Assembly (NCBI GenBank): GCA_020891255.1
Contig: BQFW01000002.1
Location: 3,534,001 to 3,598,000 of the forward strand
DNA: 64,000 nucleotides
DNA from: Entomortierella parvispora E1425
Lineage: Eukaryota > Fungi > Mortierellomycota
Direction: 5' to 3'
In this document: positions 30,023 to 45,995 of the stretch, one piece after another
Numbering within the stretch: the stretch's first letter is position 1
How the letters are laid out: each line of letters begins with the position of its first letter
The notes under the pieces: generated by a model
What the model was told of the DNA's origin: nothing
What the model saw: the letters and a program-made list of their open reading frames with translations, nothing else
The model's database searches: none
Made by a program: the position numbers and the translations under genes

Positions 30023-31634
30023 TTACTTCTTCTTCTGGGACTTGCCGCCTTTGCGCTTGCGAGCCTTGCTCTTGTTCTCTGATTCTGAATCATCAGCAGA
30101 CGAGGACTTCTCGATCTTGACAGGCTCATCCTCCTTCTTCACAGGGGAAGCCTCAGTCTTCTTGTCATCCTTCTTCTTCTCAGCCTTCTTCTTCTCCTCG
30201 GCCTTCTTCTTCTCCTCGGCCTCCTTGGCCTTGGCAGCCTCAATGCCCTCCTCGGAAGTGTAGGAAAAGACCTTCTTGATCTCGCCACGGGCAAGGCCAG
30301 TGAAAATCACACTCAAGATGCAGGCAGGAGACAAGTACAAGAGAGCGGGCTGGGCAGCCTTGAACGTGTGCATGACGTAGATGGTAGTACCCAATCCTAA
30401 AGCATACGCGATGAAGCAAGCAGTGAAGTAGGGCTTGGGGAACTTGGTGGAGCGTCCAAGGCTAGGGTTCTTGTTACCGGCCAAGTACTGATCGAAACGG
30501 AGGCAGAGGGCCACAAAGACACCAGGAATCACAATATCACCCAGGCCGAGCATAGCGAATTGGTAAGGCTCTCCGGCAGGCAAGCCAAAGAAAAGGCGGG
30601 GGAAGATGACCTTGACGGGAGCATCAAAGTTCTTGGCAACTGAGACCATGACTTCGGTACCAAAGACCCAAAAGATATCATAAAGGAAGAGACCGCTCAA
30701 GAGGATCATACCAGTCTTGAAAGAGTCCAAAGAAAGAAGCTGGATCGCGTTCAAGGCGAAACAGATACCAAAGAGGTTGGATGCGATCCAGTTCTTGGTC
30801 GCGACATAGTATCCAGAGAGGAAGACGGAAAGGACAGCCAAGATCAAGTGAAGGATGGTGAACTTGGCGGCGTAGAGTTCTAAGATTAGTCGAGAGGGGG
30901 GCAAGTAAAAAGTGGGTTAATTTCAGGGCCTAATTTTGATTTGTGTGAGGACCAGACGACAAAGAGCAGAGTATGTGGGAGAGAGCCTGATCTGCGCTTC
31001 CGAGGTTGGTAAGGCCATCATCAAGAATATATGGCTTTCTCTTTTACTTACCCTTCTTGTTCTTGGTGAGAGTCAGGTTCCACTTGTCGACGTTGATACC
31101 GGCCAGCTTGACAATGGGCGCCACACAGTTGACACCGACCTGGGTCGTGGCCATCACTCCAAGCAATCCAAAGTAGGCAGTCAAGAGGTAATTGACATAG
31201 GTCTTGTCCACGTAACGGAACACCAGGTACAGACCGAACAGGGTCATTGACCCAAAGATAGGGAACATGTAGGCATCCTCCAAAGACATGGATTCCGTTG
31301 TCTCATCCTCGTCGTCAGAGTCGTCGTCAGACTTTTTCGCCTTGGGGTTCTAGAAAGTGGACGATAAACGCATTGACGTTAATGACTCCTGGAGACAAGA
31401 ATACGGTAGCGAAAGGCTTCACGACAAAGGGCAGGATGTCTGCAAGTCCGCATTCACTGAGGCAGACATGCATGCGTCCTGGGCGACCATGGTCCTCCAT
31501 TGTACCTTCCACTTCTTGAGCGAGCCAAACGATCCAAAGTAGATGGGCAAAACAGCCATAGTGCTGAGGGCCGCGTATGCGACGTAGAGGCCCCTCTCTG
31601 CCATTTCGGGAGAAGGCACAAACTTTTCGGTCAT
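30023..31634 (-). CDS. SPP: Signal peptide peptidase (GxGD intramembrane aspartic protease, A22B), 3 exons
   Basis: FLYDIFWVFGT (YD), MLGLGDIVIPG (GLGD), AAQPALLYL (QPALLY); KKK at the C-terminus (ER-retrieval-like). Confidence 0.96.
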
Positions 31635-31795: not shown

Positions 31796-32021
31796 GCGCC
31801 GTGCGAACCTCGCCAGTTGCAAATGAGCGCAGTCTACGGAGGTTGTTACCTCGCTGGACGCAAATTTCATCTAGAGAGGGCACACTCCGGAACCCGAGCT
31901 GGCCTTGACTGCTGATTCAAACAAACAAAGCAGATCAGCATTTGAATGCGTCCATTCTCTCCATTGCAGTCATCCTTGCTCTCTTCCCTCCCCTTCCCCC
32001 TCACATCAACCCACATCCACT

Positions 32022-32483
32022 ATGCCTCGCCATTACGATCTCTGCGCCCGTGTGCAGAACGGATTCCGTGCCAAGCTTCGCCGCATCGCAGTTCCCGACA
32101 CTAAGCTCAATCTCGCCATCTCCAATGTTTTGTACAAGGAGGGATTCATCGCCTCGGTCAGCAGAGGCAACCATGTCGAGCCCGATACCTCCTTTGTTGC
32201 CACAACACCCGACAACATCGCCACCCGCCGTCTTTGGCTCGAGCTCAAGTACAACAATGACGAGCCCGTCTTGAAGAAGATGTCAGCCATCTCCAAGCCC
32301 TCCAAGAAGGTTGTCATGAAGGTTGAGGAGCTCCAGAACTTGGCCGCTGGCAACCGTTCCCAGTTCGTCAAGGGTCTCCAGCCAGGAGAGATCGCTATTT
32401 TGACCACAAACTACGGTGTCTTGGAGCTGAGAGAGGCTTTGGAGAAGGGCGCCGGAGGCGAGGTCTTGTGCAGAGCCATCTAA
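32022..32483 (+). CDS. MRPS8: Mitochondrial ribosomal protein uS8m, intronless
   Basis: DLCARVQNG, ISNVLYKEGFI, LWLELKY, ISKPSKKV, ILTTNYGVLELREALEKGAGGEVLCR. Confidence 0.93.
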   Translation: MPRHYDLCARVQNGFRAKLRRIAVPDTKLNLAISNVLYKEGFIASVSRGNHVEPDTSFVATTPDNIATRRLWLELKYNNDEPVLKKMSAISKPSKKVVMKVEELQNLAAGNRSQFVKGLQPGEIAILTTNYGVLELREALEKGAGGEVLCRAI

Positions 32484-32767: not shown

Positions 32768-34825
32768 TTACCAAGCCTGAGCTTCTTCCTCTTCCTCCTC
32801 TTCGACTCTGTCACTGACCATATCCCAAAGTGACTCGACATCCTTGTCCACATTCTCATCGTCCTCGATATCAAACGAGGACAAATCGTCGTACCAGGAC
32901 GTAATATCCTCCACAACAGAATCCAATCCGACGTTTCCGAGATCCCAGATAGTCTCCCAGGCAGAGCACTCTGTGGGTGTCATCTTTTCGCAGCCCTTGC
33001 TGCGGGGCGGGATCAACACCTTGTCGACAACGTGAATCACACCGTTACCTGCGATCCAGTTCTCGTATCCATGGAGTACACGCGCCTTCTTGTTGATAAA
33101 AATCTCATCTCGACGAGGAGTGTAGGAACGAGGAAGCTCGTGGACCCCACCATCGCCACAGTGAGGGTGGTGAGGGCGATGAGGGTGATGAGGGTGGTGA
33201 GGGTGATGAGGGAGGTGAGGGAGGTGATGATGGTGATGATGATGGTGGTGGTGGTGATGCCTTCCTCCTTTATGAGGATGATGATGAGGATGGTTGGGGT
33301 CGTGGTGAGGGTGATGGTGACCAGGATCCGTCTTGTTCTCACCGCCATCAGGCTGGGTCAATGTGGCAGTTGGCTCATCCCAGACAATGATGTCGGTGGA
33401 TCTAAAGCGATCCTTGAAGGCCTCAATCAGATCGGTCAAGCCCTTGGGCTTGTAGTCAATCTTGGAATGAGAAGCCGTTTCCGAAGGTGTTGGCTTGCGC
33501 GCCTTGGCAAGCACATGCAGCTCGTACTTTGGCGAGTGAAGCAAAGTCTGGAGGACGATTTCGCGATACTTCTCTCCGGTCTTGCCGTCATCCAAGGTCT
33601 TGTTAAAGATCTCGGGAGTGTAGACCACTTTGTTGGCGATCTGATACATCGTAAAGATCTTGAGGTGCTCGCGCCCCTGGTTGGAGAAGAGCCACTTCAA
33701 AAGCTTCTTAGGAAGGGCTAATAGAAGGATGGTGAGATAGGATGAGTATCCGCTCTTTCATTTTTTGGTGAAAACTTCTGTCAAAGTCTTGCACTGATTG
33801 ATGTACATACCTTTCCAGGCCTTGTCATGAGCAGCAAAGAGTGTCAGGCTCTTGCCATCTCGGACATGGCCATCCGTTCCGGTCTTGGCCCAAGCCTTGG
33901 TCAGATACGTAAAGTGCATACCACGTCTCATAATCTCATCCAAGATGGTCTCGCCTGGAGGACGAATGATTCTATTGACGCCATGGACAATGGCGCCTGA
34001 TTGCGCAACCAAATCTCGGACAACGATCTTGGCCCTGTTGACAAAGATATCACCACCCTCTTTGGGAGGCTCCTCCTCGAACCCTTGGTTCGAATCCGCG
34101 ATCCAGACCTCAGGCTCATCTCTCCAGAAAGAGTTACGAACTGTTGCTGCAGCTGAGGTGGATGGAATCCCAGGCTGCTCGAGTGAAATACGCAAGAGTT
34201 GGGCCGAATAGTCAAGACCAGGTGACTCGTAGAGCGAACGGATAACGTGCTCGTCATGGAGACGAGAAGAGTTGTAGACCTGCGATGAGATGTGGTACAT
34301 GAGTACATCCCTTGTAGGATAGTCGATGTCGGAGATCGAGTCAAAGGCGTCGTTCGTGGGTGCGAAGAGAGTTGGCTATGGACCATTGCGTCGTTTCGGC
34401 AAAGAAGAGTTAGCTAGTATTCTCTGGTTCTCTCAACGTTCATTTTCCCGATCCCATGTAGAACTCGCTCTCTTTCTCTCAGAACTCAACTCACCTGGGA
34501 AGCGGGGTCAGCCAAGAGCTGAGTGAGTTCTGGTGACAAAGAATAAGCGGTTAGTGTCTTGTTACAAACAATAAGTTCTATATGGGTGGAAGACCCTAGA
34601 CCAGCCCTCACCCTTGTCCTTCTGAATCATCTCCAAGAGCTTCGAGAACTCAGGTCGCTGAGCAAGAACATCAAGGATAGTTACTGCATTGGTGTATATC
34701 AAGGGCTGCTGATGCTGTTGAGCATGGTGCGTGTCGCGAAACGTGTACTGCGAGATAGGGGTGGCGACGGCACAGCTGCTGATTAAGGCGAGAGCCAAGC
34801 CCAGAGAGAGTGCGGCGGTGTGCAT
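32768..34825 (-). CDS. Secreted fasciclin (FAS1) domain protein with a long His-rich insert
   Basis: Signal peptide MHTAALSLGLALALISSCAVA; FAS1 motifs TLFAPTNDAF, AIVHGVNRII, LTLFAAHDKAW, NGVIHVVDKVLIPP; His-rich block about 33165-33320. Confidence 0.88.
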
Positions 34826-35653: not shown

Positions 35654-36624
35654 GGTACAGCTGTGTTGGGGGATGAATGGGCTGAAAGCAGCTGAAGGCA
35701 TGGACCACAAGGTTGACTGAAAAACAAGCAACAGAAATGTGGCAGTCACTATGACTTTGGCTCTGAGCCACCCATTCGGTGAAGTCGCGATCTCGACAGT
35801 TGCCAGTGCACAGAGATACCCTCCAGGGGCCTTACAAAGCGTTCCTCAGAAGATGTTGCAAGTGAAACAGCCTGCTCCGAATTTGACTTGAATCCCCTAT
35901 TACATGCACCCGCCTCTGATCTGCCAACATCATAGCTGTGGACCAAGGATAAGTAGGACAGGCCAGCATCACAACAGGTTGGTTCGAAGATATGAAGGTC
36001 AATACAGGAGGTGAAGCACGGATTGGGACTCATATTCTTCTCGAGATTGAGAGCCATCTCGATCTGTCAGACGCTGAACCTCCAGCCTGTGGCGTTGGAT
36101 GCAACCTGCCTGTTGGAAGGCCACCAAATAGAATCATTGCGTTCATCGATCGCATTTGCTGCTCCTGCCCATGAACCACACTTGGACGGGTTGGAGGCCA
36201 ATGCCAAACACGCTGGACACAATGTTCTAATTACAGAGCTTGGTGCGACCACTCTCCACGTTGGACGTCTCTTGCTCAGCCTGCTCTCCCGCGGTGCGCC
36301 TTTCTGTCTTTGCTGCTCAGTGCAGTACAGTAGGCCATTCTCGCCTACTTGTTTGTTCCACACCGCTCCTCTTTCCTCCCCTTCCTGTCCTCCTCTCCAT
36401 CCCCATTACCTCCATTCCCCTTTCTCCTTTCTCACTGTTCAACAGAGTTGGGTTGGTCTCCTCCTCTTCTTGTATTCAGGTCACACACCTTATTTTGACA
36501 TTCTCAACCCTTGACTGAACTCTGGCACTCTTCATTCCAATCGTCATCATCCTACCCTGCAATTCAGGAACAATTGAACGCCACTTTCGGATCCCAACAT
36601 TCAGACCCACCGCTGCAAGTGGAC

Positions 36625-39385
36625 ATGTCATCCACCGACACAGCAAAGACGTCATCTTCAGGAGGACATCCATCCAATGACGCCCAGTCCTCTTCCACTG
36701 CAAGGCAGCCAGACTCTGAGGCTTCGCCCTTTGCTGACACAACTGTAGGGAATGCTGCCAACGAGCCCATTGCTGCTGGAGCCGCCAACATAACCGCTGG
36801 TGGGTCGCCTGGCCAGCAAGGAGCAGATGACAGCGATGGGGATGATCAGCCCTGCCAAGCGTGTGGGGTCTTCCCAGCTCGTTTTCAATGCTCAGCGTGC
36901 CAAAGTGTTCGGTATTGCTCCCAAGAATGTCAAGCCTCTGACTGGAGGATTCATTATCGCGAATGTGCAGAGATTGTTGCGGCTATGAAGGAAGAGCAAG
37001 AACAGGAAAATGGAGACGGCACAGCTGCTGCAGTCGGTCAGAGCCAACCTCGATCTAGAACCAGTGTCCCCAGACTGCAACAGGGTCAAAGCGGCGACGC
37101 AGGTCATGAATCTCTGCAGGGTAAGGAGAGAGAACTGAGAGAAGGTGGTGTATGTTATTAAAAAAAAAGGGCGAGCCATCAGGGCAAGAGGAAATCTGAC
37201 TCGTCGATCTGGGCATGTCATTTACTGACTAGGGGCTAAAACGCACTCTTTCTTTTGCCATTTTTAGACGGACAGAATGATAGACCAGCATCGGACGACC
37301 CATTGGGTGCAGAGGCAGCCAATGTCAGGGCAACAGCAAATCGACCCAGGAGACGACCACGGGAACCTAGAAGGCGGCCGCGATTGACTGCAGAGCAAAT
37401 TGCTGCGTTCGAGGAAGCAGAGCGGATAGCAGATATGAAGTTTTACATGCTGCAAGTTTACAAGATTATCAAGCCTGTGGTGATTTGTATCTGCCTCAGT
37501 ATTCTCTGGGTCAAAATTTCGATGGCTGGAAGCGACTATAGGTAGGCACCGTTGATGAAGTCGGCTCAGATCGATAGCTCTACAATGATGGTAGGAAAAA
37601 CGCTCGGAGATTTGCTGACGAACGGTCTCTTTCGTTGAATTTAGACCAACACAATCATCCTACACAGTGTACACGGAGACACCAACGTCAACAGTGTCAC
37701 AGAATATCCTTGGATCATTGGCAAACGCCGGAATTATTATTGCACAGATTGTCATCGTCACGATCATCATCGTGGTGCTGTTCAAACGAGGTCACATCAA
37801 GGTATGACAAGAAAAATTGCCAAGACGTGCTACGGAAACACTCTTTATCAAAACTCACAGATATTGCACCTCTATCCCCTGATAGGTCCTCATTGGTTTC
37901 TTTATGGTTGTGGTGGCGATGTTATTGGGCTTTATGGGTTACATCCTGCTTCTCAACTTGATCCAGGTTCTACGAATCCCGCTCGACTATGTGACAATGT
38001 CTTTTGCTCTATGGAATTTCGCGGCCACAGGTCTAGTATCTGTATTCTGGAAAGGACCTATGTGGCTTCAGCAAGTGTATCTCACTGTCATGAGTAGTTT
38101 GATGGTAAGGGATTCTGATCTGGATATATCGGTTGGTATTGACCATGACCACGTATTATCCACCTCAAGAATTGCTTTCTGAACGTCCCTCTCCTACTAG
38201 GCATTCTCGCTGACCGGTCTTGCAGAATGGACAACTTGGATGCTCCTGGCGCTTTTAGTTGTTTGGGGTATGATCAATATCATGAACCACGAAGAATTGG
38301 ATATCTTGAACGCGCTTTGCTAACTAGCGTTATTATTATATCATTTCGTTTCTAGATTTGATTGCGGTTCTTTGCCCGTTTGGACCACTCAAAATCTTGG
38401 TCGAGAGCTCCAGAAATCAGAACCAAGAGGTGCCAGCATTGTTATATACCGTCAATGCCGTGTGGTTCATGGCCTCACCGCCAAACTCTATCCTGGATAG
38501 GGAAGCGGATAAGGCAAACGAAGCGATTGAATTTGAGAATCTGACCTCAGGTCAAAGCAATAGCCATGCCTTTACCCAGGGTCACGCGCGAGCAACTGGA
38601 AGAGACGGTGGTAGTATCAGCAGCGCTGGCGCAAGCAGTCGAAACAGCGGCTTGGATTCAACCTTTGCAGCCAGTGGCATTTCCAGGACGTCTTCTTCAA
38701 TGGCACTCGTACCAAATTCCAATCGGGACGACTTTACACCAATCGAATCTCGCGAAAACATTGAGCTCCGAGAACGCCAGAGGTCAGGACCCTCTCCCGG
38801 CAGAAGTTATGGACCGGAAGATGGCAACAGACAACAGTCGGGCCCACCTCGTCGAAGCGAAGATAGAGAGGAACGCGGAGAGGATCCTACCGGAGATGAC
38901 GATGACGATGATGATGGCGGCGGACTAAAACTCGGTTTGGGTGACTTTGTGTTTTACAGTGTATTGATCGCCAGAGCAGGTACGGTTCCAGCTTTGTTTC
39001 TGTGGATCTGATGCTGTTTAAAAAATGTCACTCGAGACGAACTACTGAAATGGGACTAATTGCTCTTTTGTCTTTTACACAGCCATGTTTGACTGGGTCA
39101 CGACCATGTGCTGTACAGTAGCAGTCCTTACCGTAAGTCTTCTCCGAAAACTTTTTTTTTATTATAACTGATCGACGGGAGATCCAAAAATACTCATAGG
39201 ACCTTTACCTCTATTCGTGTGTCTTCTAGGGTATGAACGCGACCATCTTCTTGTTGGCCATTTATCAAAAGGCCTTGCCGGCACTCCCCATCTCAATCTG
39301 CTTTGGAATGCTCTTCTACTTTGCCACTCGTTTTGCTTTGGTTCCATTCTTGGCAGTCCTTGGGCCTAGCCAGATCTTTATTTGA
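36625..39385 (+). CDS. PSEN: Presenilin (A22A, gamma-secretase catalytic subunit type) with N-terminal MYND zinc finger, 8 exons
   Basis: MYND CQAC-x8-CSAC-x5-CSQEC-x7-HYREC in exon 1, joined in frame by a GT-AG intron to KIIKPVVICICLSILWV; catalytic W|DLIAVLCPFGPLKILVE and KLGLGDFVFYSVL; KALPALPIS; stop TGA 39383-39385. Confidence 0.93.
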
Positions 39386-39817
39386 GGGCACGATGTGCAA
39401 CGCGAGACATCGTTACACACCAAGGGAAAGTGGCCTCCTCATCTGCCATTTCTCCCATTAGAACTTTCCATGATACCCCGTCTCGCCCTCCTCAAATAAA
39501 AGTTGAATTAAGTTGAGAGTGAAGTTGTTCGTTTCGTTTCAAAGGAGGTTCCATTGACAATGTCAATGCTAGTAACGGATCGCGGTCAAGTTGCTACTGG
39601 CGCCTTTCAAAGAAAGGATCTAGTCAAGTGCATTTGATAGGGACGAATCAAAAACCCCACATAGTGGTTCAAGCGGACCTCACACGCACTTCAAATGAAG
39701 CAAGGCCAAGTCGCGTGCCTTGCCTCAGAACGTGGCTGCACAAGTCCCAGCACTGGAGTGATCGGAGCTGGAGGGACCAGGACGAACAGGTCTCCGCACG
39801 TGCCTTCAATTCAGTCA

Positions 39818-39827
39818 TGATTGGCTG
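39818..39827. promoter_or_regulatory. CCAAT box about 220 bp upstream of the 67-aa membrane ORF
   Basis: TGATTGGCTG, identical to the motif in two other promoters. Confidence 0.45.
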
Positions 39828-40045
39828 CAATTTGGTGGCAAAAAAAAATCAGAACAAAAAAGAGCAGTTGGTTGGTGTGGGCAATGGACCAAGCAGACAG
39901 GGATGGATGAATGCAGTTCATCCCTTCCTCTTCATCTTTTTTTCATTTCTTTTCTCTCTTCTTTCTACTTCTCTTCATTCCCTTCTTCGACCTCACTCGC
40001 CGCTTTATAGGACCACTTTTACTTCCACCAACCAACAAGACAACA

Positions 40046-40661: not shown

Positions 40662-41360
40662 CTACTTGCGAGGGACATTGACAGTAATGGCCTTTCGCGT
40701 CGCAAACGCCTCGTGCATATCGGGGCTCGAGGGCAATGGGAACTCGGGGATATACAATGACCCAGCACCATAGTTGGCAATCAGAGGCACCAACCCAGAA
40801 ATCGAACCACCATTGCCTCCTCCTTGAATCTCAATGTCGGCACAGTTTGAATACAACTCTCGGTCACCCTGGGCATTGTTCCAAAGCCACATGAAGACTG
40901 CATTGCCGTTCGGGGCATTCTTGGGGATAGGCACCGACACCGAGTACGATGACCCACTGGTGGTTCCCTTGAGACAGTCGCGAATTAGGGTCTTGAGAAC
41001 GACCCAGGTCTTTCCAGAATCGTAGGAGACTGCCCATTGACAATGTCCACCGCCGTGAGAGACTCCGATAGAGTACTCGGTCTTGATGGATTGGCCGGCT
41101 TTGTAGACGGTGCGGGTCTTTGAAGGGACAGTGTTTTTGCAAATGGGCGAGGTCTTGCTGCTGAAGGTACCGATAGGAGAGTTGAGATCATAATCGATGA
41201 TTTGCCCGGCCGAGGGCTTTGGACAACCAGCCCGGGGACTGGATCGAGCGCAGGGATGAAGAAGTCCAACGTGAGCTTCGACGACATTGGATCCTGGGAG
41301 GATCAAGATCATTGCCAGGAGAGTGAAGAGAGCCGAAAGGGCAAGAGCGTAAATATTCAT
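40662..41360 (-). CDS. Secreted AA11-like lytic polysaccharide monooxygenase, intronless
   Basis: Signal peptide ending VEA|H (mature His1), SHGGGHCQ (second His), WLWNNAQGDRELYSNCADI (axial Tyr; cf. the AA11 NREMYMNCA motif). Confidence 0.8.
   Translation of the reverse strand: MNIYALALSALFTLLAMILILPGSNVVEAHVGLLHPCARSSPRAGCPKPSAGQIIDYDLNSPIGTFSSKTSPICKNTVPSKTRTVYKAGQSIKTEYSIGVSHGGGHCQWAVSYDSGKTWVVLKTLIRDCLKGTTSGSSYSVSVPIPKNAPNGNAVFMWLWNNAQGDRELYSNCADIEIQGGGNGGSISGLVPLIANYGAGSLYIPEFPLPSSPDMHEAFATRKAITVNVPRK

Positions 41361-43278: not shown

Positions 43279-45995
<2,717 letters not shown>

What the first reader, a model, noticed from the sequence alone, without database searches (positions are those of the whole stretch)
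36625..39385. MYND zinc finger fused to an intact presenilin: a candidate new form of regulated intramembrane proteolysis
Seen: all eight MYND ligands in exon 1, joined in frame by a canonical phase-1 intron to a complete presenilin with both catalytic aspartates (WD, GLGD) and PALP. Established: yeasts and most Dikarya lack presenilin/gamma-secretase; animal and plant presenilins have a plain disordered N-terminus; MYND fingers bind PxLxP-type motifs in partner proteins. Inference: a cytosolic adaptor hard-wired to the protease could recruit substrates or regulators, or be released as a signal. I know of no description of this fusion.
Basis: partly seen in the sequence, partly recalled or inferred. 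Interest (0 to 1): 0.85.

Follow-up and report, generated by a model that had tools for sequence, protein, structure and literature searches.

The report
Fungal presenilin with built-in MYND finger
This is an intact gene for presenilin, the cutting subunit of the gamma-secretase membrane protease. Its cytosolic front end carries a MYND zinc finger. The fusion is real and is the standard form of presenilin in all non-Dikarya fungi, yet no paper I could find discusses it.

Summary
An 8-exon gene on the + strand (36625-39385, all introns GT..AG) encodes a 680-aa protein. Exon 1 carries a canonical zf-MYND (aa 77-114, all eight ligands). A 147-nt phase-1 intron joins it to a complete presenilin (WD405, GLGD598-601, PALP646-649).

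No RNA run of this organism was listed, so the junction is not shown by cDNA here. Comparative evidence settles the fusion:
- 54 of 54 full-length relatives, from every non-Dikarya fungal phylum plus an aphelid, carry both Pfam domains.
- The MYND zinc ligands and its Gln/Trp peptide-binding residues are as invariant as the catalytic GLGD.
- In Piromyces genomic DNA MYND and TM1 share one open frame; transcript-like contigs of two other relatives carry the whole fusion as one uninterrupted ORF.
- 27 non-fungal presenilins, including Fonticula, have no MYND.

The window's gene is therefore an ordinary Mortierellomycota ortholog of a fungus-wide architecture. That architecture is already in automatic annotations and in one supplementary table, but no text I searched discusses it.

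The most likely mechanism, inferred and untested, is a cytosolic docking site for a proline-motif partner of a fungal gamma-secretase.

The parts
36625..39385 (+). Whole MYND-presenilin coding region, ATG to TGA, 8 exons, 680 aa
   Evidence: Model built. Pfam on the exon pieces. Orthologs with the same architecture.
36625..37120 (+). Exon 1: low-complexity N-terminus, MYND finger and the start of the linker (aa 1-165 plus 1 base)
   Evidence: Of the 40 differences listed against diverged strains X4/X9, 27 fall on codon position 3.
36853..36966 (+). MYND zinc finger, aa 77-114, C4-C2HC. It also has S99, Q103 and W107, which match columns invariant across the family.
   Evidence: Pfam PF01753 E=3.2e-10. 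Closest solved chains are ETO/CBFA2T1 2od1 and DEAF-1 2jw6. 12 of 13 listed strain differences fall on third codon positions. Invariant columns.
37121..37267 (+). Intron 1: 147 nt, phase 1, GTAAGG...CTGAC(37225-37229)...TAG. It would introduce an in-frame stop if retained.
   Evidence: Diverged strains replace it with unalignable sequence of other lengths, while the flanking exons stay alignable. The annotated Gamsiella ortholog has an intron at the homologous place.
37268..37541 (+). Exon 2: linker and TM1. It holds the NVRATAN motif (37321-37341), an Arg-rich cluster ending in PRLTA (37342-37392), an acidic helix, a possible internal Met (37435-37437) and KFYMLQVYKIIKP leading into TM1.
   Evidence: The linker upstream of the internal Met is conserved across Mortierellomycota.
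37645..37801 (+). Exon 3: lumenal loop 1 and TM2
   Evidence: Pfam Presenilin positions 39-87
37886..38104 (+). Exon 4: TM3-TM5, including WNF (38012-38020)
   Evidence: Pfam Presenilin positions 89-161, E=2.8e-20. Asn invariant and Trp at least 90% conserved.
38201..38267 (+). Exon 5: TM6. The codon of the first catalytic Asp (D405) is split by intron 5: G at 38267, AT at 38356-38357.
   Evidence: This Asp is invariant in 54 fungal and 27 non-fungal sequences.
38356..38979 (+). Exon 6: end of TM6, PALL, a long disordered cytosolic loop (38448-38918), an acidic run and GLGD (38934-38945, second catalytic Asp D601)
   Evidence: Pfam Presenilin positions 186-349, E=1e-25. The loop has pLDDT below 50 in the ortholog model.
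39083..39132 (+). Exon 7: TM8
   Evidence: Aligned with orthologs.
39230..39385 (+). Exon 8: TM9 with PALP (39278-39289), C-terminus and the TGA stop
   Evidence: Pfam Presenilin positions 368-407, E=6.4e-15

Best explanation
Shown: the locus is the Mortierellomycota ortholog of the fungal presenilin. This is a nine-helix GxGD aspartyl intramembrane protease with both catalytic aspartates, PAL(P) and the TM4 WNF motif. Its N-terminal extension carries a canonical, well-folded MYND zinc finger. A roughly 100-residue flexible linker and a long helix that runs into TM1 tether the finger to the protease core. The fusion dates to the base of Fungi, including aphelids, after the split from Fonticula, and has been kept ever since.

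Inferred:
(1) The protein is the catalytic subunit of a gamma-secretase complex. Nicastrin, APH-1 and PEN-2 families have the same phyletic pattern in non-Dikarya fungi.
(2) The N-terminus, and hence the MYND, faces the cytosol, as in human PS1.
(3) The MYND works as a built-in docking site. It would bind a short proline/leucine motif (PPPLI or PxLxP type) in a partner by beta-strand addition. The most likely partner is the cytosolic tail of a membrane substrate, or a regulator or trafficking factor. The flexible tether would hold that partner within reach of the active site on the cytosolic face.

The partner is unknown.
For: Gene and motifs.

The fusion is real:
- 54 of 54 diverse fungal relatives carry PF01080+PF01753.
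- The annotated Gamsiella ortholog has an intron at the place homologous to the window's intron 1.
- Uninterrupted MYND-presenilin ORFs occur in contigs L001-L004, whereas the related Mucor lusitanicus gene spans about 377 nt more than its CDS, consistent with introns.
- The same holds for L005-L008, drawn from 13 contigs carrying this ORF; the four fetched share one 3' end and have variable 5' ends.
- The Piromyces finnis genome has no stop between MYND and TM1.

Selection:
- All zinc ligands plus Ser, Gln and Trp of the MYND are invariant across 54 sequences, on a par with D and GLGD.
- 12 of 13 listed differences from diverged strains inside the MYND are at third codon positions.

Fold (models are of the Gamsiella and Rhizophagus orthologs, not the window protein):
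- The ortholog models give the MYND pLDDT 91-94 and the core 84-93.
- Foldseek matches the core to human PS1 in gamma-secretase (TM 0.70-0.79 by target).
- It matches the MYND to ETO MYND at 1.3 A.

Peptide-binding type:
- The closest solved MYNDs are ETO NHR4 and DEAF-1.
- Their corepressor-binding Thr/Ser, Gln and Trp (PMC3555993) align with S90, Q103 and W107 of the window protein.

Fungal specificity: 0 of 27 non-fungal presenilins have a MYND. Fonticula has none within 4 kb on either side of its gene.
Against: - No transcript evidence from this organism.
- An internal Met (37435-37437) just before TM1 could in principle start a MYND-less isoform.
- No partner, substrate or activity is known for any fungal presenilin.
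- The AlphaFold models give no confident placement of the MYND or linker motifs relative to the core.
- Only this 64-kb window was available, so the presence of nicastrin, APH-1 and PEN-2 in this genome is not shown.
- MYND fingers also serve chaperone or assembly roles, which the data do not exclude.
- Neocallimastigomycota also keep a MYND-less paralog, so the protease core can evidently exist without the finger.
Confidence: 0.6

Rival explanations
1. Assembly or trafficking module. The MYND does not select substrates. It docks a chaperone, co-chaperone or ER-quality-control factor needed to fold, assemble or retain the fungal gamma-secretase. The Arg-rich cluster after the linker motif would act as an ER-retrieval signal.
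For: - The MYND is invariant in all lineages regardless of ecology, as expected for a housekeeping assembly role.
- In about half of the family a conserved linker motif (RGN[IV]AQ[IL]IN, or NVRATAN in Mortierellomycota) precedes a basic cluster.
- From my own knowledge, not tested here: some MYND proteins (PHD2, ZMYND10) bind HSP90 co-chaperones.
Against: - The closest solved relatives are the corepressor-peptide-binding ETO and DEAF-1 fingers, not the chaperone-linked ones. ZMYND10 does appear lower in that list.
- Animal, plant and amoebozoan gamma-secretases assemble without such a module (0 of 27 with MYND).
Confidence: 0.22
2. Cis-regulation. The MYND binds a motif in the protein's own linker or loop and so gates access to the active site (autoinhibition or self-assembly).
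For: Twelve of 15 Mortierellomycota sequences examined have a PxLxP motif (PRLTP or PQLTP) 21 residues before the KFYML helix, about 100 residues after the MYND.
Against: - The motif is confined to Mortierellomycota.
- The window itself has PRLTA.
- No PxLxP is conserved in the linker or loop of other phyla.
- AlphaFold shows no strand addition or confident docking of linker segments.
Confidence: 0.07
3. Non-proteolytic scaffold. The protein acts mainly as a membrane scaffold or ion-leak protein, independent of gamma-secretase catalysis, and the MYND anchors cytosolic signalling proteins.
For: From my own knowledge, not tested here: proteolysis-independent roles of presenilins are reported in Dictyostelium, moss and animals. 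Nothing in the present data requires catalysis.
Against: Both catalytic Asp, GLGD, PAL and WNF are invariant or nearly so across a very deep divergence. That argues that catalysis and complex formation are under selection.
Confidence: 0.07
4. Gene-model artefact in this genome. The MYND exon belongs to a separate small gene ending at the stop inside 'intron 1' (37161), and presenilin starts at the Met at 37435.
For: - No RNA from this organism.
- One M. alpina annotation (L011) splits the locus into a 104-aa gene and a 508-aa presenilin.
- Several database models lack the MYND.
Against: - The M. alpina split coincides with a frame break inside the MYND exon of that assembly. Other M. alpina assemblies give the fused protein.
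- MYND-less models of Powellomyces and Bifiguratus have an intact MYND ORF just upstream of, or overlapping, the annotated start.
- The linker encoded between the intron and the internal Met is conserved in Mortierellomycota.
- The Met position is Leu or Phe in other phyla.
- Single-ORF fusions exist in relatives.
- Only 274 nt would remain for a 3' UTR, a promoter and a 5' UTR.
Confidence: 0.04

Closest known systems
Annotated fungal orthologs, for example the Gamsiella multidivaricata 'Presenilin-domain-containing protein' (P0003), Mortierella alpina 'Presenilin-1' (P0157) and Phycomyces blakesleeanus PHYBLDRAFT_185773, named 'MYND-type domain-containing protein' in UniRef (P0205)
   Same: Identical architecture (PF01753 then PF01080). 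The presenilin core is 91% identical to Gamsiella. The MYND is near-identical, intron 1 sits at the homologous place, and the Mortierellomycota share the same linker motifs.
   Different: Nothing essential. The window has PRLTA where most Mortierellomycota have PRLTP or PQLTP. None of these proteins has been studied experimentally as far as the searched literature shows.
Human presenilin-1/2, catalytic subunit of gamma-secretase (for example PDB 6IYC, 5A63, 6IDF chain B)
   Same: Nine-TM fold (TM-score 0.70-0.79 by target for the ortholog model). Catalytic Asp in TM6 and GLGD in TM7, PALP, WNF in TM4, and a long disordered TM6-TM7 loop.
   Different: Human, other animal and the protist presenilins sampled here have no folded N-terminal domain (0 of 27 with MYND). 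The fungal protein adds a MYND plus a conserved linker motif ahead of TM1, and has WD rather than YD at the first Asp.
MYND fingers of ETO/CBFA2T1 (NHR4; PDB 2OD1, 2ODD) and DEAF-1 (2JW6, 4A24)
   Same: C4-C2HC cross-brace finger with the same spacing. These are the best PDB sequence matches. The ortholog model superposes on ETO MYND at 1.3 A. The Ser/Thr, Gln and Trp that contact the SMRT/N-CoR PPPLI peptide are present (PMC3555993).
   Different: ETO and DEAF-1 are soluble nuclear co-repressor adaptors. Here the finger is tethered to a polytopic membrane protease, and its ligand is unknown.
Fonticula alba presenilin (P0107, XP_009496662.1)
   Same: Together with an unnamed ENA metagenome sequence (P0015), it is sister to the fungal presenilin clade in my tree. 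It has a long acidic N-terminal extension.
   Different: No MYND in the protein or within 4 kb on either side of the gene. This dates the fusion to the fungal stem, or implies a loss in Fonticula.
Other intramembrane proteases with built-in cytosolic or peripheral adaptor domains (for example rhomboid RHBDL4 with ubiquitin- and p97-binding motifs, site-2 proteases with PDZ domains). This comparison is from my own knowledge and was not tested here.
   Same: The same logic: a recognition module hard-wired to an intramembrane protease.
   Different: Unrelated protease families and unrelated modules. I know of no such module described for presenilins.

Membership tests
Presenilin (Peptidase A22A, Pfam PF01080) | Full-length match to the family profile | tested here: met
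   Exons 2-8 cover profile positions 1-408 in order. Three single exons alone exceed the 34.3-bit cut-off (72.9, 90.8 and 55.3 bits).
Presenilin (Peptidase A22A, Pfam PF01080) | Two catalytic aspartates: [YW]D in TM6 and GxGD in TM7 | tested here: met
   WD at aa 404-405 and GLGD at aa 598-601. Both Asp are invariant in 54 fungal and 27 non-fungal sequences.
Presenilin (Peptidase A22A, Pfam PF01080) | PAL motif in TM9 | tested here: met
   PALP at aa 646-649, at least 90% conserved in the family.
Presenilin (Peptidase A22A, Pfam PF01080) | Nine-TM presenilin fold | tested here: met
   Tested on the Gamsiella ortholog, which is 91% identical in the core. AlphaFold core pLDDT is 84-93. The top 19 Foldseek hits are PS1 or PS2 chains of human gamma-secretase, E down to 5e-12. 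The spliced window protein has no reference, so it was not folded itself.
Gamma-secretase complex (presenilin + nicastrin + APH-1 + PEN-2) | Partner subunits encoded in the same genome | not testable with these tools
   Only this 64-kb window is available. The supplementary table of PMC10406608 shows nicastrin, Aph-1 and PEN-2 orthogroups with the same occupancy in non-Dikarya fungi.
Gamma-secretase complex (presenilin + nicastrin + APH-1 + PEN-2) | TM4 WNF motif, which from my own knowledge is needed for PEN-2 binding | tested here: met
   WNF at aa 352-354. Asn is invariant and Trp at least 90% conserved in the family. The functional meaning of the motif rests on my own knowledge of PS1.
Gamma-secretase complex (presenilin + nicastrin + APH-1 + PEN-2) | Intramembrane cleavage of type-I membrane stubs, and endoproteolysis into NTF and CTF | not testable with these tools
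   Needs biochemistry.
zf-MYND (Pfam PF01753) | C4-C2HC ligand set with canonical spacing, scoring above the family cut-off | tested here: met
   C77, C80, C89, C92, C98, C102, H110 and C114. 40.3 bits against a cut-off of 22.7, profile positions 1-39 of 39.
zf-MYND (Pfam PF01753) | MYND fold | tested here: met
   Ortholog models give pLDDT 91-94 over the finger. Superposition on ETO MYND 2od1 is 1.3 A over 38 columns, and on DEAF-1 1.9 A.
zf-MYND (Pfam PF01753) | Peptide-binding residues of the ETO/DEAF-1 type (Thr/Ser on strand 2, Gln and Trp on the helix) | tested here: met
   The alignment to DEAF-1 and ETO places S90, Q103 and W107 opposite T516, Q529 and W533 of DEAF-1, which PMC3555993 lists as binding residues. 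Gln and Trp are invariant in 54 of 54 sequences. The Ser is replaced in Glomeromycota.
zf-MYND (Pfam PF01753) | Zinc binding and binding of a proline-rich peptide | not testable with these tools
   Needs recombinant protein.
MYND-presenilin fusion (fungal architecture PF01753+PF01080) | Both domains on one mRNA | tested here: inconclusive
   For this organism no RNA run was listed, and the laid runs were DNA. For relatives the feature is met: uninterrupted ORFs in L001-L008 and in Piromyces genomic DNA.
MYND-presenilin fusion (fungal architecture PF01753+PF01080) | Orthology with the fused fungal clade | tested here: met
   In the tree, the window groups with the Mortierellomycota sequences (support 100) inside a fungal clade (98). 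That tree was built on presenilin columns only.

The most novel reading that the evidence does not exclude
Fungal gamma-secretase chooses what it cuts, or when, from the cytosolic side. The invariant MYND finger would be an obligatory exosite that captures a short proline/leucine motif in the cytosolic tails of specific membrane proteins or of a regulator. This would be a fungus-wide, Dikarya-lost signalling route with a substrate-selection logic unlike the ectodomain-shedding rule of animal gamma-secretase. The motif could be used to predict the still unknown fungal substrates.
Probability: 0.25. Interest if true: 0.8.

Novelty: new variant of a known kind. Interest (0 to 1): 0.6.

Why it matters
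Presenilin and gamma-secretase are among the most studied membrane proteases, yet their fungal branch is essentially unexplored. In the searched library a single paper notes that the complex survives outside Dikarya. No substrate, phenotype or partner is known.

A folded, invariant peptide-binding finger fused to the catalytic subunit across the non-Dikarya fungi gives a concrete experimental handle. MYND pull-downs, peptide arrays and MYND point mutants in tractable Mucor, Rhizopus or Mortierella strains could find partners and substrates.

The fusion is also a clean molecular marker. It is shared by fungi and aphelids and absent from Fonticula and the other non-fungal eukaryotes sampled.

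It also flags systematic annotation errors, because the MYND exon is dropped or split off in many database models.

Tried and rejected
1. RNA evidence for the exon 1-2 junction. An RNA-run search listed none. A search of any kind listed only DNA holders plus runs of unknown kind. Laying X4, X5, X9 and X10 showed genomic contigs of strains less than 90% identical, with divergent sequence in place of the window's introns, so they gave no splice evidence. They did show exon-only conservation and third-position substitutions.

2. Cis-ligand idea. A PxLxP motif (PRLTP) in the linker is confined to Mortierellomycota, and the window has PRLTA. I rejected it as a general mechanism.

3. AlphaFold of two orthologs, to see whether the MYND or the linker motif docks on the core. 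The linker stayed at low confidence (pLDDT 35-57) and no extra strand formed. This was uninformative. The tool returns no coordinates or PAE.

4. Literature. 'MYND' plus 'presenilin' gave 23 papers; of the 20 listed, none is about the fusion by title or abstract. 'Presenilin' plus 'early-diverging fungi' gave only PMC10406608. A presenilin-evolution preprint (10.1101/394270) does not mention MYND.

5. The full spliced window protein could not be submitted to the search or fold tools. It has no reference, and read-through of stops is not accepted. I therefore used single exons and the orthologs P0003 and P0196.

6. Non-fungal MYND-presenilins were tested only on the 27 non-fungal representatives among the best 150 hits of one exon-6 search. 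An exhaustive architecture search of all eukaryotes was not possible.

7. My regex for MYND undercounts. It missed Nowakowskiella, Sorochytrium and a model truncated inside the finger, which Pfam or the alignment caught.
Full report
**1. What is in the sequence**

Reading 36000-40000 and assembling the exons gives an 8-exon gene on the + strand. The exons are 36625-37120, 37268-37541, 37645-37801, 37886-38104, 38201-38267, 38356-38979, 39083-39132 and 39230-39385. The CDS is 2043 nt and encodes 680 aa. All seven introns are GT..AG and 84-147 nt long.

It has GTAAGG, a CTGAC branch-like site at 37225-37229, and TAG.

Pfam on the separate exons gives:
- zf-MYND in exon 1 (aa 77-114, E=3.2e-10, 40.3 bits against a cut-off of 22.7, full profile);
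- Presenilin profile positions 1-408 tiled in order over exons 2-8.

The eight MYND ligands are present (C77, C80, C89, C92, C98, C102, H110, C114). So are WD (404-405), GLGD (598-601), PALP (646-649) and WNF (352-354).

**2. Is the junction real?**

No RNA run of this organism was listed. A second search listed DNA holders and four runs of unknown kind. Laid on 36400-39600, those four proved to be genomic contigs of strains less than 90% identical:
- Exons align, but each intron is replaced by unalignable sequence of a different length. Intron 1, for example, is replaced by 103 letters in X4.
- 27 of the 40 listed substitutions in exon 1 fall on codon position 3.
- Inside the MYND codons the figure is 12 of 13.

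This is comparative support for the exon structure and for purifying selection on the MYND frame. It is not a cDNA.

**3. Relatives**

A HMMER search of 1.84 billion cluster representatives with exon 6 returned presenilins. Thirteen of the best 150 have an N-terminal MYND by pattern.

A search with the 675-aa Gamsiella protein P0003 listed over 120 clusters. PF01753+PF01080 occurs in:
- Mortierellomycota (Mortierella, Linnemannia, Podila, Lobosporangium, Actinomortierella and others);
- Mucoromycota (Mucor, Rhizopus, Phycomyces, Lichtheimia, Umbelopsis, Absidia, Calcarisporiella);
- Glomeromycota (Rhizophagus, Gigaspora, Acaulospora, Paraglomus);
- Zoopagomycota (Basidiobolus; the Syncephalis model starts inside the finger);
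- Chytridiomycota (Phlyctochytrium, Geranomyces, Cladochytrium, Irineochytrium, Nowakowskiella, and Rhizoclosmatium and Blyttiomyces);
- Neocallimastigomycota (Neocallimastix, Piromyces);
- Blastocladiomycota (Sorochytrium);
- the aphelid Amoeboaphelidium.

In an alignment of 54 such proteins (A1) all 54 carry both Pfam domains. The invariant columns are seven of the eight MYND ligands (the last Cys is at least 90% conserved), the Ser, Gln and Trp of the finger, the TM6 Asp and GLGDFVFYSVL.

By contrast, 27 presenilins outside the fungal clade all have PF01080 and none has PF01753. Only three of these were named (Trichuris, Dermamoeba, Fonticula alba); the rest are unnamed representatives.

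A maximum-likelihood tree on presenilin columns only (quick search, LG+G4, SH-aLRT support) shows:
- the window groups with the Mortierellomycota sequences (support 100), next to M. alpina and Gamsiella;
- that group sits inside a fungal clade (98);
- Fonticula plus an unnamed ENA metagenome sequence (P0015) form the sister group.

**4. Independent proof of the fusion without splice models**

- P0198, a Mucorales-like protein, is encoded by an uninterrupted 1674-nt ORF on four contigs from four consecutive runs (L001-L004). The Mucor lusitanicus ortholog spans about 377 nt more than its CDS, consistent with introns.
- P0086, which falls in the Neocallimastigomycota clade, is an uninterrupted 1119-codon ORF on 13 contigs. 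The four fetched (L005-L008) share one 3' end and have variable 5' ends, which is how transcripts behave.
- In the Piromyces finnis genome there is no stop codon between the MYND and the TM1 motif.
- The annotated Gamsiella gene has an intron at the place homologous to the window's intron 1.

**5. Models without MYND are mostly annotation misses**

- Powellomyces hirtus has a complete MYND ORF at L015:3878-3994, 7 nt before the annotated start.
- Bifiguratus has one at L016:3928-4047, overlapping the annotated start.
- One M. alpina assembly splits the locus into a 104-aa gene and a 508-aa presenilin. This coincides with a frame break inside the MYND exon. Other M. alpina assemblies give the fused protein.
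- Fonticula has no MYND anywhere in 10.3 kb around its gene.
- A probably genuine MYND-less presenilin is the second Neocallimastigomycota paralog (P0248 group). The Gonapodya models also lack a MYND, but I did not check their upstream DNA.

The internal Met at 37435 is Leu or Phe in other phyla. The linker upstream of it is conserved in Mortierellomycota. A separate downstream start is therefore unlikely as the main form.

**6. Anatomy of the N-terminal module**

AlphaFold models of two orthologs (Gamsiella; Rhizophagus) show:
- a confident MYND (pLDDT 91-94);
- a disordered linker;
- a long helix running into TM1 (pLDDT 84-89);
- a confident nine-helix core;
- a disordered TM6-TM7 loop.

Foldseek matches the core to PS1 of human gamma-secretase (TM 0.70-0.79 by target) and the finger to ETO MYND (1.3 A) and DEAF-1 (1.9 A).

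By sequence, the closest solved MYNDs are ETO/CBFA2T1 NHR4 and DEAF-1. PMC3555993 lists T516, Q529 and W533 of DEAF-1 as the conserved corepressor-binding residues. These align with S90, Q103 and W107 here.

The linker holds a second fungal-specific motif, RGN[IV]AQ[IL]IN followed by basic residues. It occurs in Glomeromycota, several chytrids, Neocallimastigomycota, Umbelopsis and Calcarisporiella. Mortierellomycota have a variant, N[IV]RA[TV]AN followed by RRRPREPRRRPR. Its role is unknown.

A PxLxP (PRLTP) motif after the basic cluster is Mortierellomycota-specific, and the window has PRLTA.

**7. Context in the literature**

[quoted passage not shown] Its supplementary table lists presenilin, nicastrin, Aph-1 and PEN-2 orthogroups with matching occupancy. 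It records IPR002893 (MYND) in 17 of 58 members of the presenilin group. MYND is not mentioned in the main text.

Searches for MYND with presenilin, for presenilin with fungal phyla and for presenilin with 'early-diverging fungi' found no description of the fusion and no functional study of a fungal presenilin.

**8. Mechanism**

Shown: an intact presenilin with all catalytic and complex-related motifs, permanently fused to a canonical, strongly constrained MYND finger on the side of TM1 that is cytosolic in solved gamma-secretases.

Inferred: the finger is a docking site that binds a proline/leucine motif of a partner and holds it on a flexible tether of about 100 residues at the cytosolic face of the protease. 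The partner could be a substrate tail or a regulator.

Rivals, each with my estimate in the rival list:
- a role in chaperoned assembly or trafficking;
- cis-regulation through the linker;
- a non-proteolytic scaffold;
- a gene-model artefact.

**9. Verdict**

The finding is real, but it is not unique to this genome. The window holds an ordinary Mortierellomycota copy of the fungal-type presenilin. The architecture is visible in automatic annotation and in one supplementary table, yet it is undescribed and unstudied.

I rate it a new variant of a known kind, with moderate to high interest.

Noticed in passing
window 30023-30904 (-): A signal peptide peptidase gene (Pfam Peptidase_A22B, E=1.5e-66, with GLGD and PAL) lies about 6 kb upstream of the presenilin. 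This is the other eukaryotic GxGD intramembrane protease family. The proximity is probably coincidental.
   Followed up: partly
L015:3878-3994 (Powellomyces hirtus), L016:3928-4047 (Bifiguratus adelaidae), L011:2485-3001 (Mortierella alpina GCA_977091265.1): Public gene models of presenilin in these genomes omit or split off the MYND exon. In Powellomyces and Bifiguratus an intact MYND ORF lies at or just before the annotated start. In that M. alpina assembly a frame break inside the MYND exon coincides with a split into a 104-aa and a 508-aa gene.
   Followed up: yes
Relatives P0043, P0051, P0086, P0254 versus P0248, P0238, P0244, P0246: Neocallimastigomycota have two presenilin paralogs. One is very long (980-1258 aa) with the MYND at about aa 200-280 and Asn/Lys-rich inserts. 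The other is a 620-aa form without a MYND.
   Followed up: partly
window 37321-37392 (aa 184-207); relatives in alignment A1: A second fungal-specific linker motif lies between the MYND and TM1: RGN[IV]AQ[IL]IN plus a basic cluster. The Mortierellomycota variant is NVRATAN plus RRRPREPRRRPR. It is present in about half of the family and matched by pattern in 1 of the 27 non-fungal presenilins checked. Its function is unknown.
   Followed up: partly
window 40662-41360 (-): A 232-aa ORF with a hydrophobic N-terminus and a weak LPMO_10 match (E=2.8e-4, just under the cut-off). It may be a secreted copper mono-oxygenase-like protein.
   Followed up: no
window 32768-33700 (-) and 33758-34300 (-): ORFs with fasciclin-domain matches, probably exons of one gene. 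The first carries a long His/Pro repeat (HHPHH...).
   Followed up: no
window 44427-45107 (+) and L011:6184-8295: A class I/II aminotransferase gene lies downstream of the presenilin both in the window and in M. alpina, which suggests local synteny within Mortierellomycota.
   Followed up: no
window 31905-32483 (+): An ORF with a Ribosomal_S8 domain (E=1.5e-19) and an N-terminal extension.
   Followed up: no
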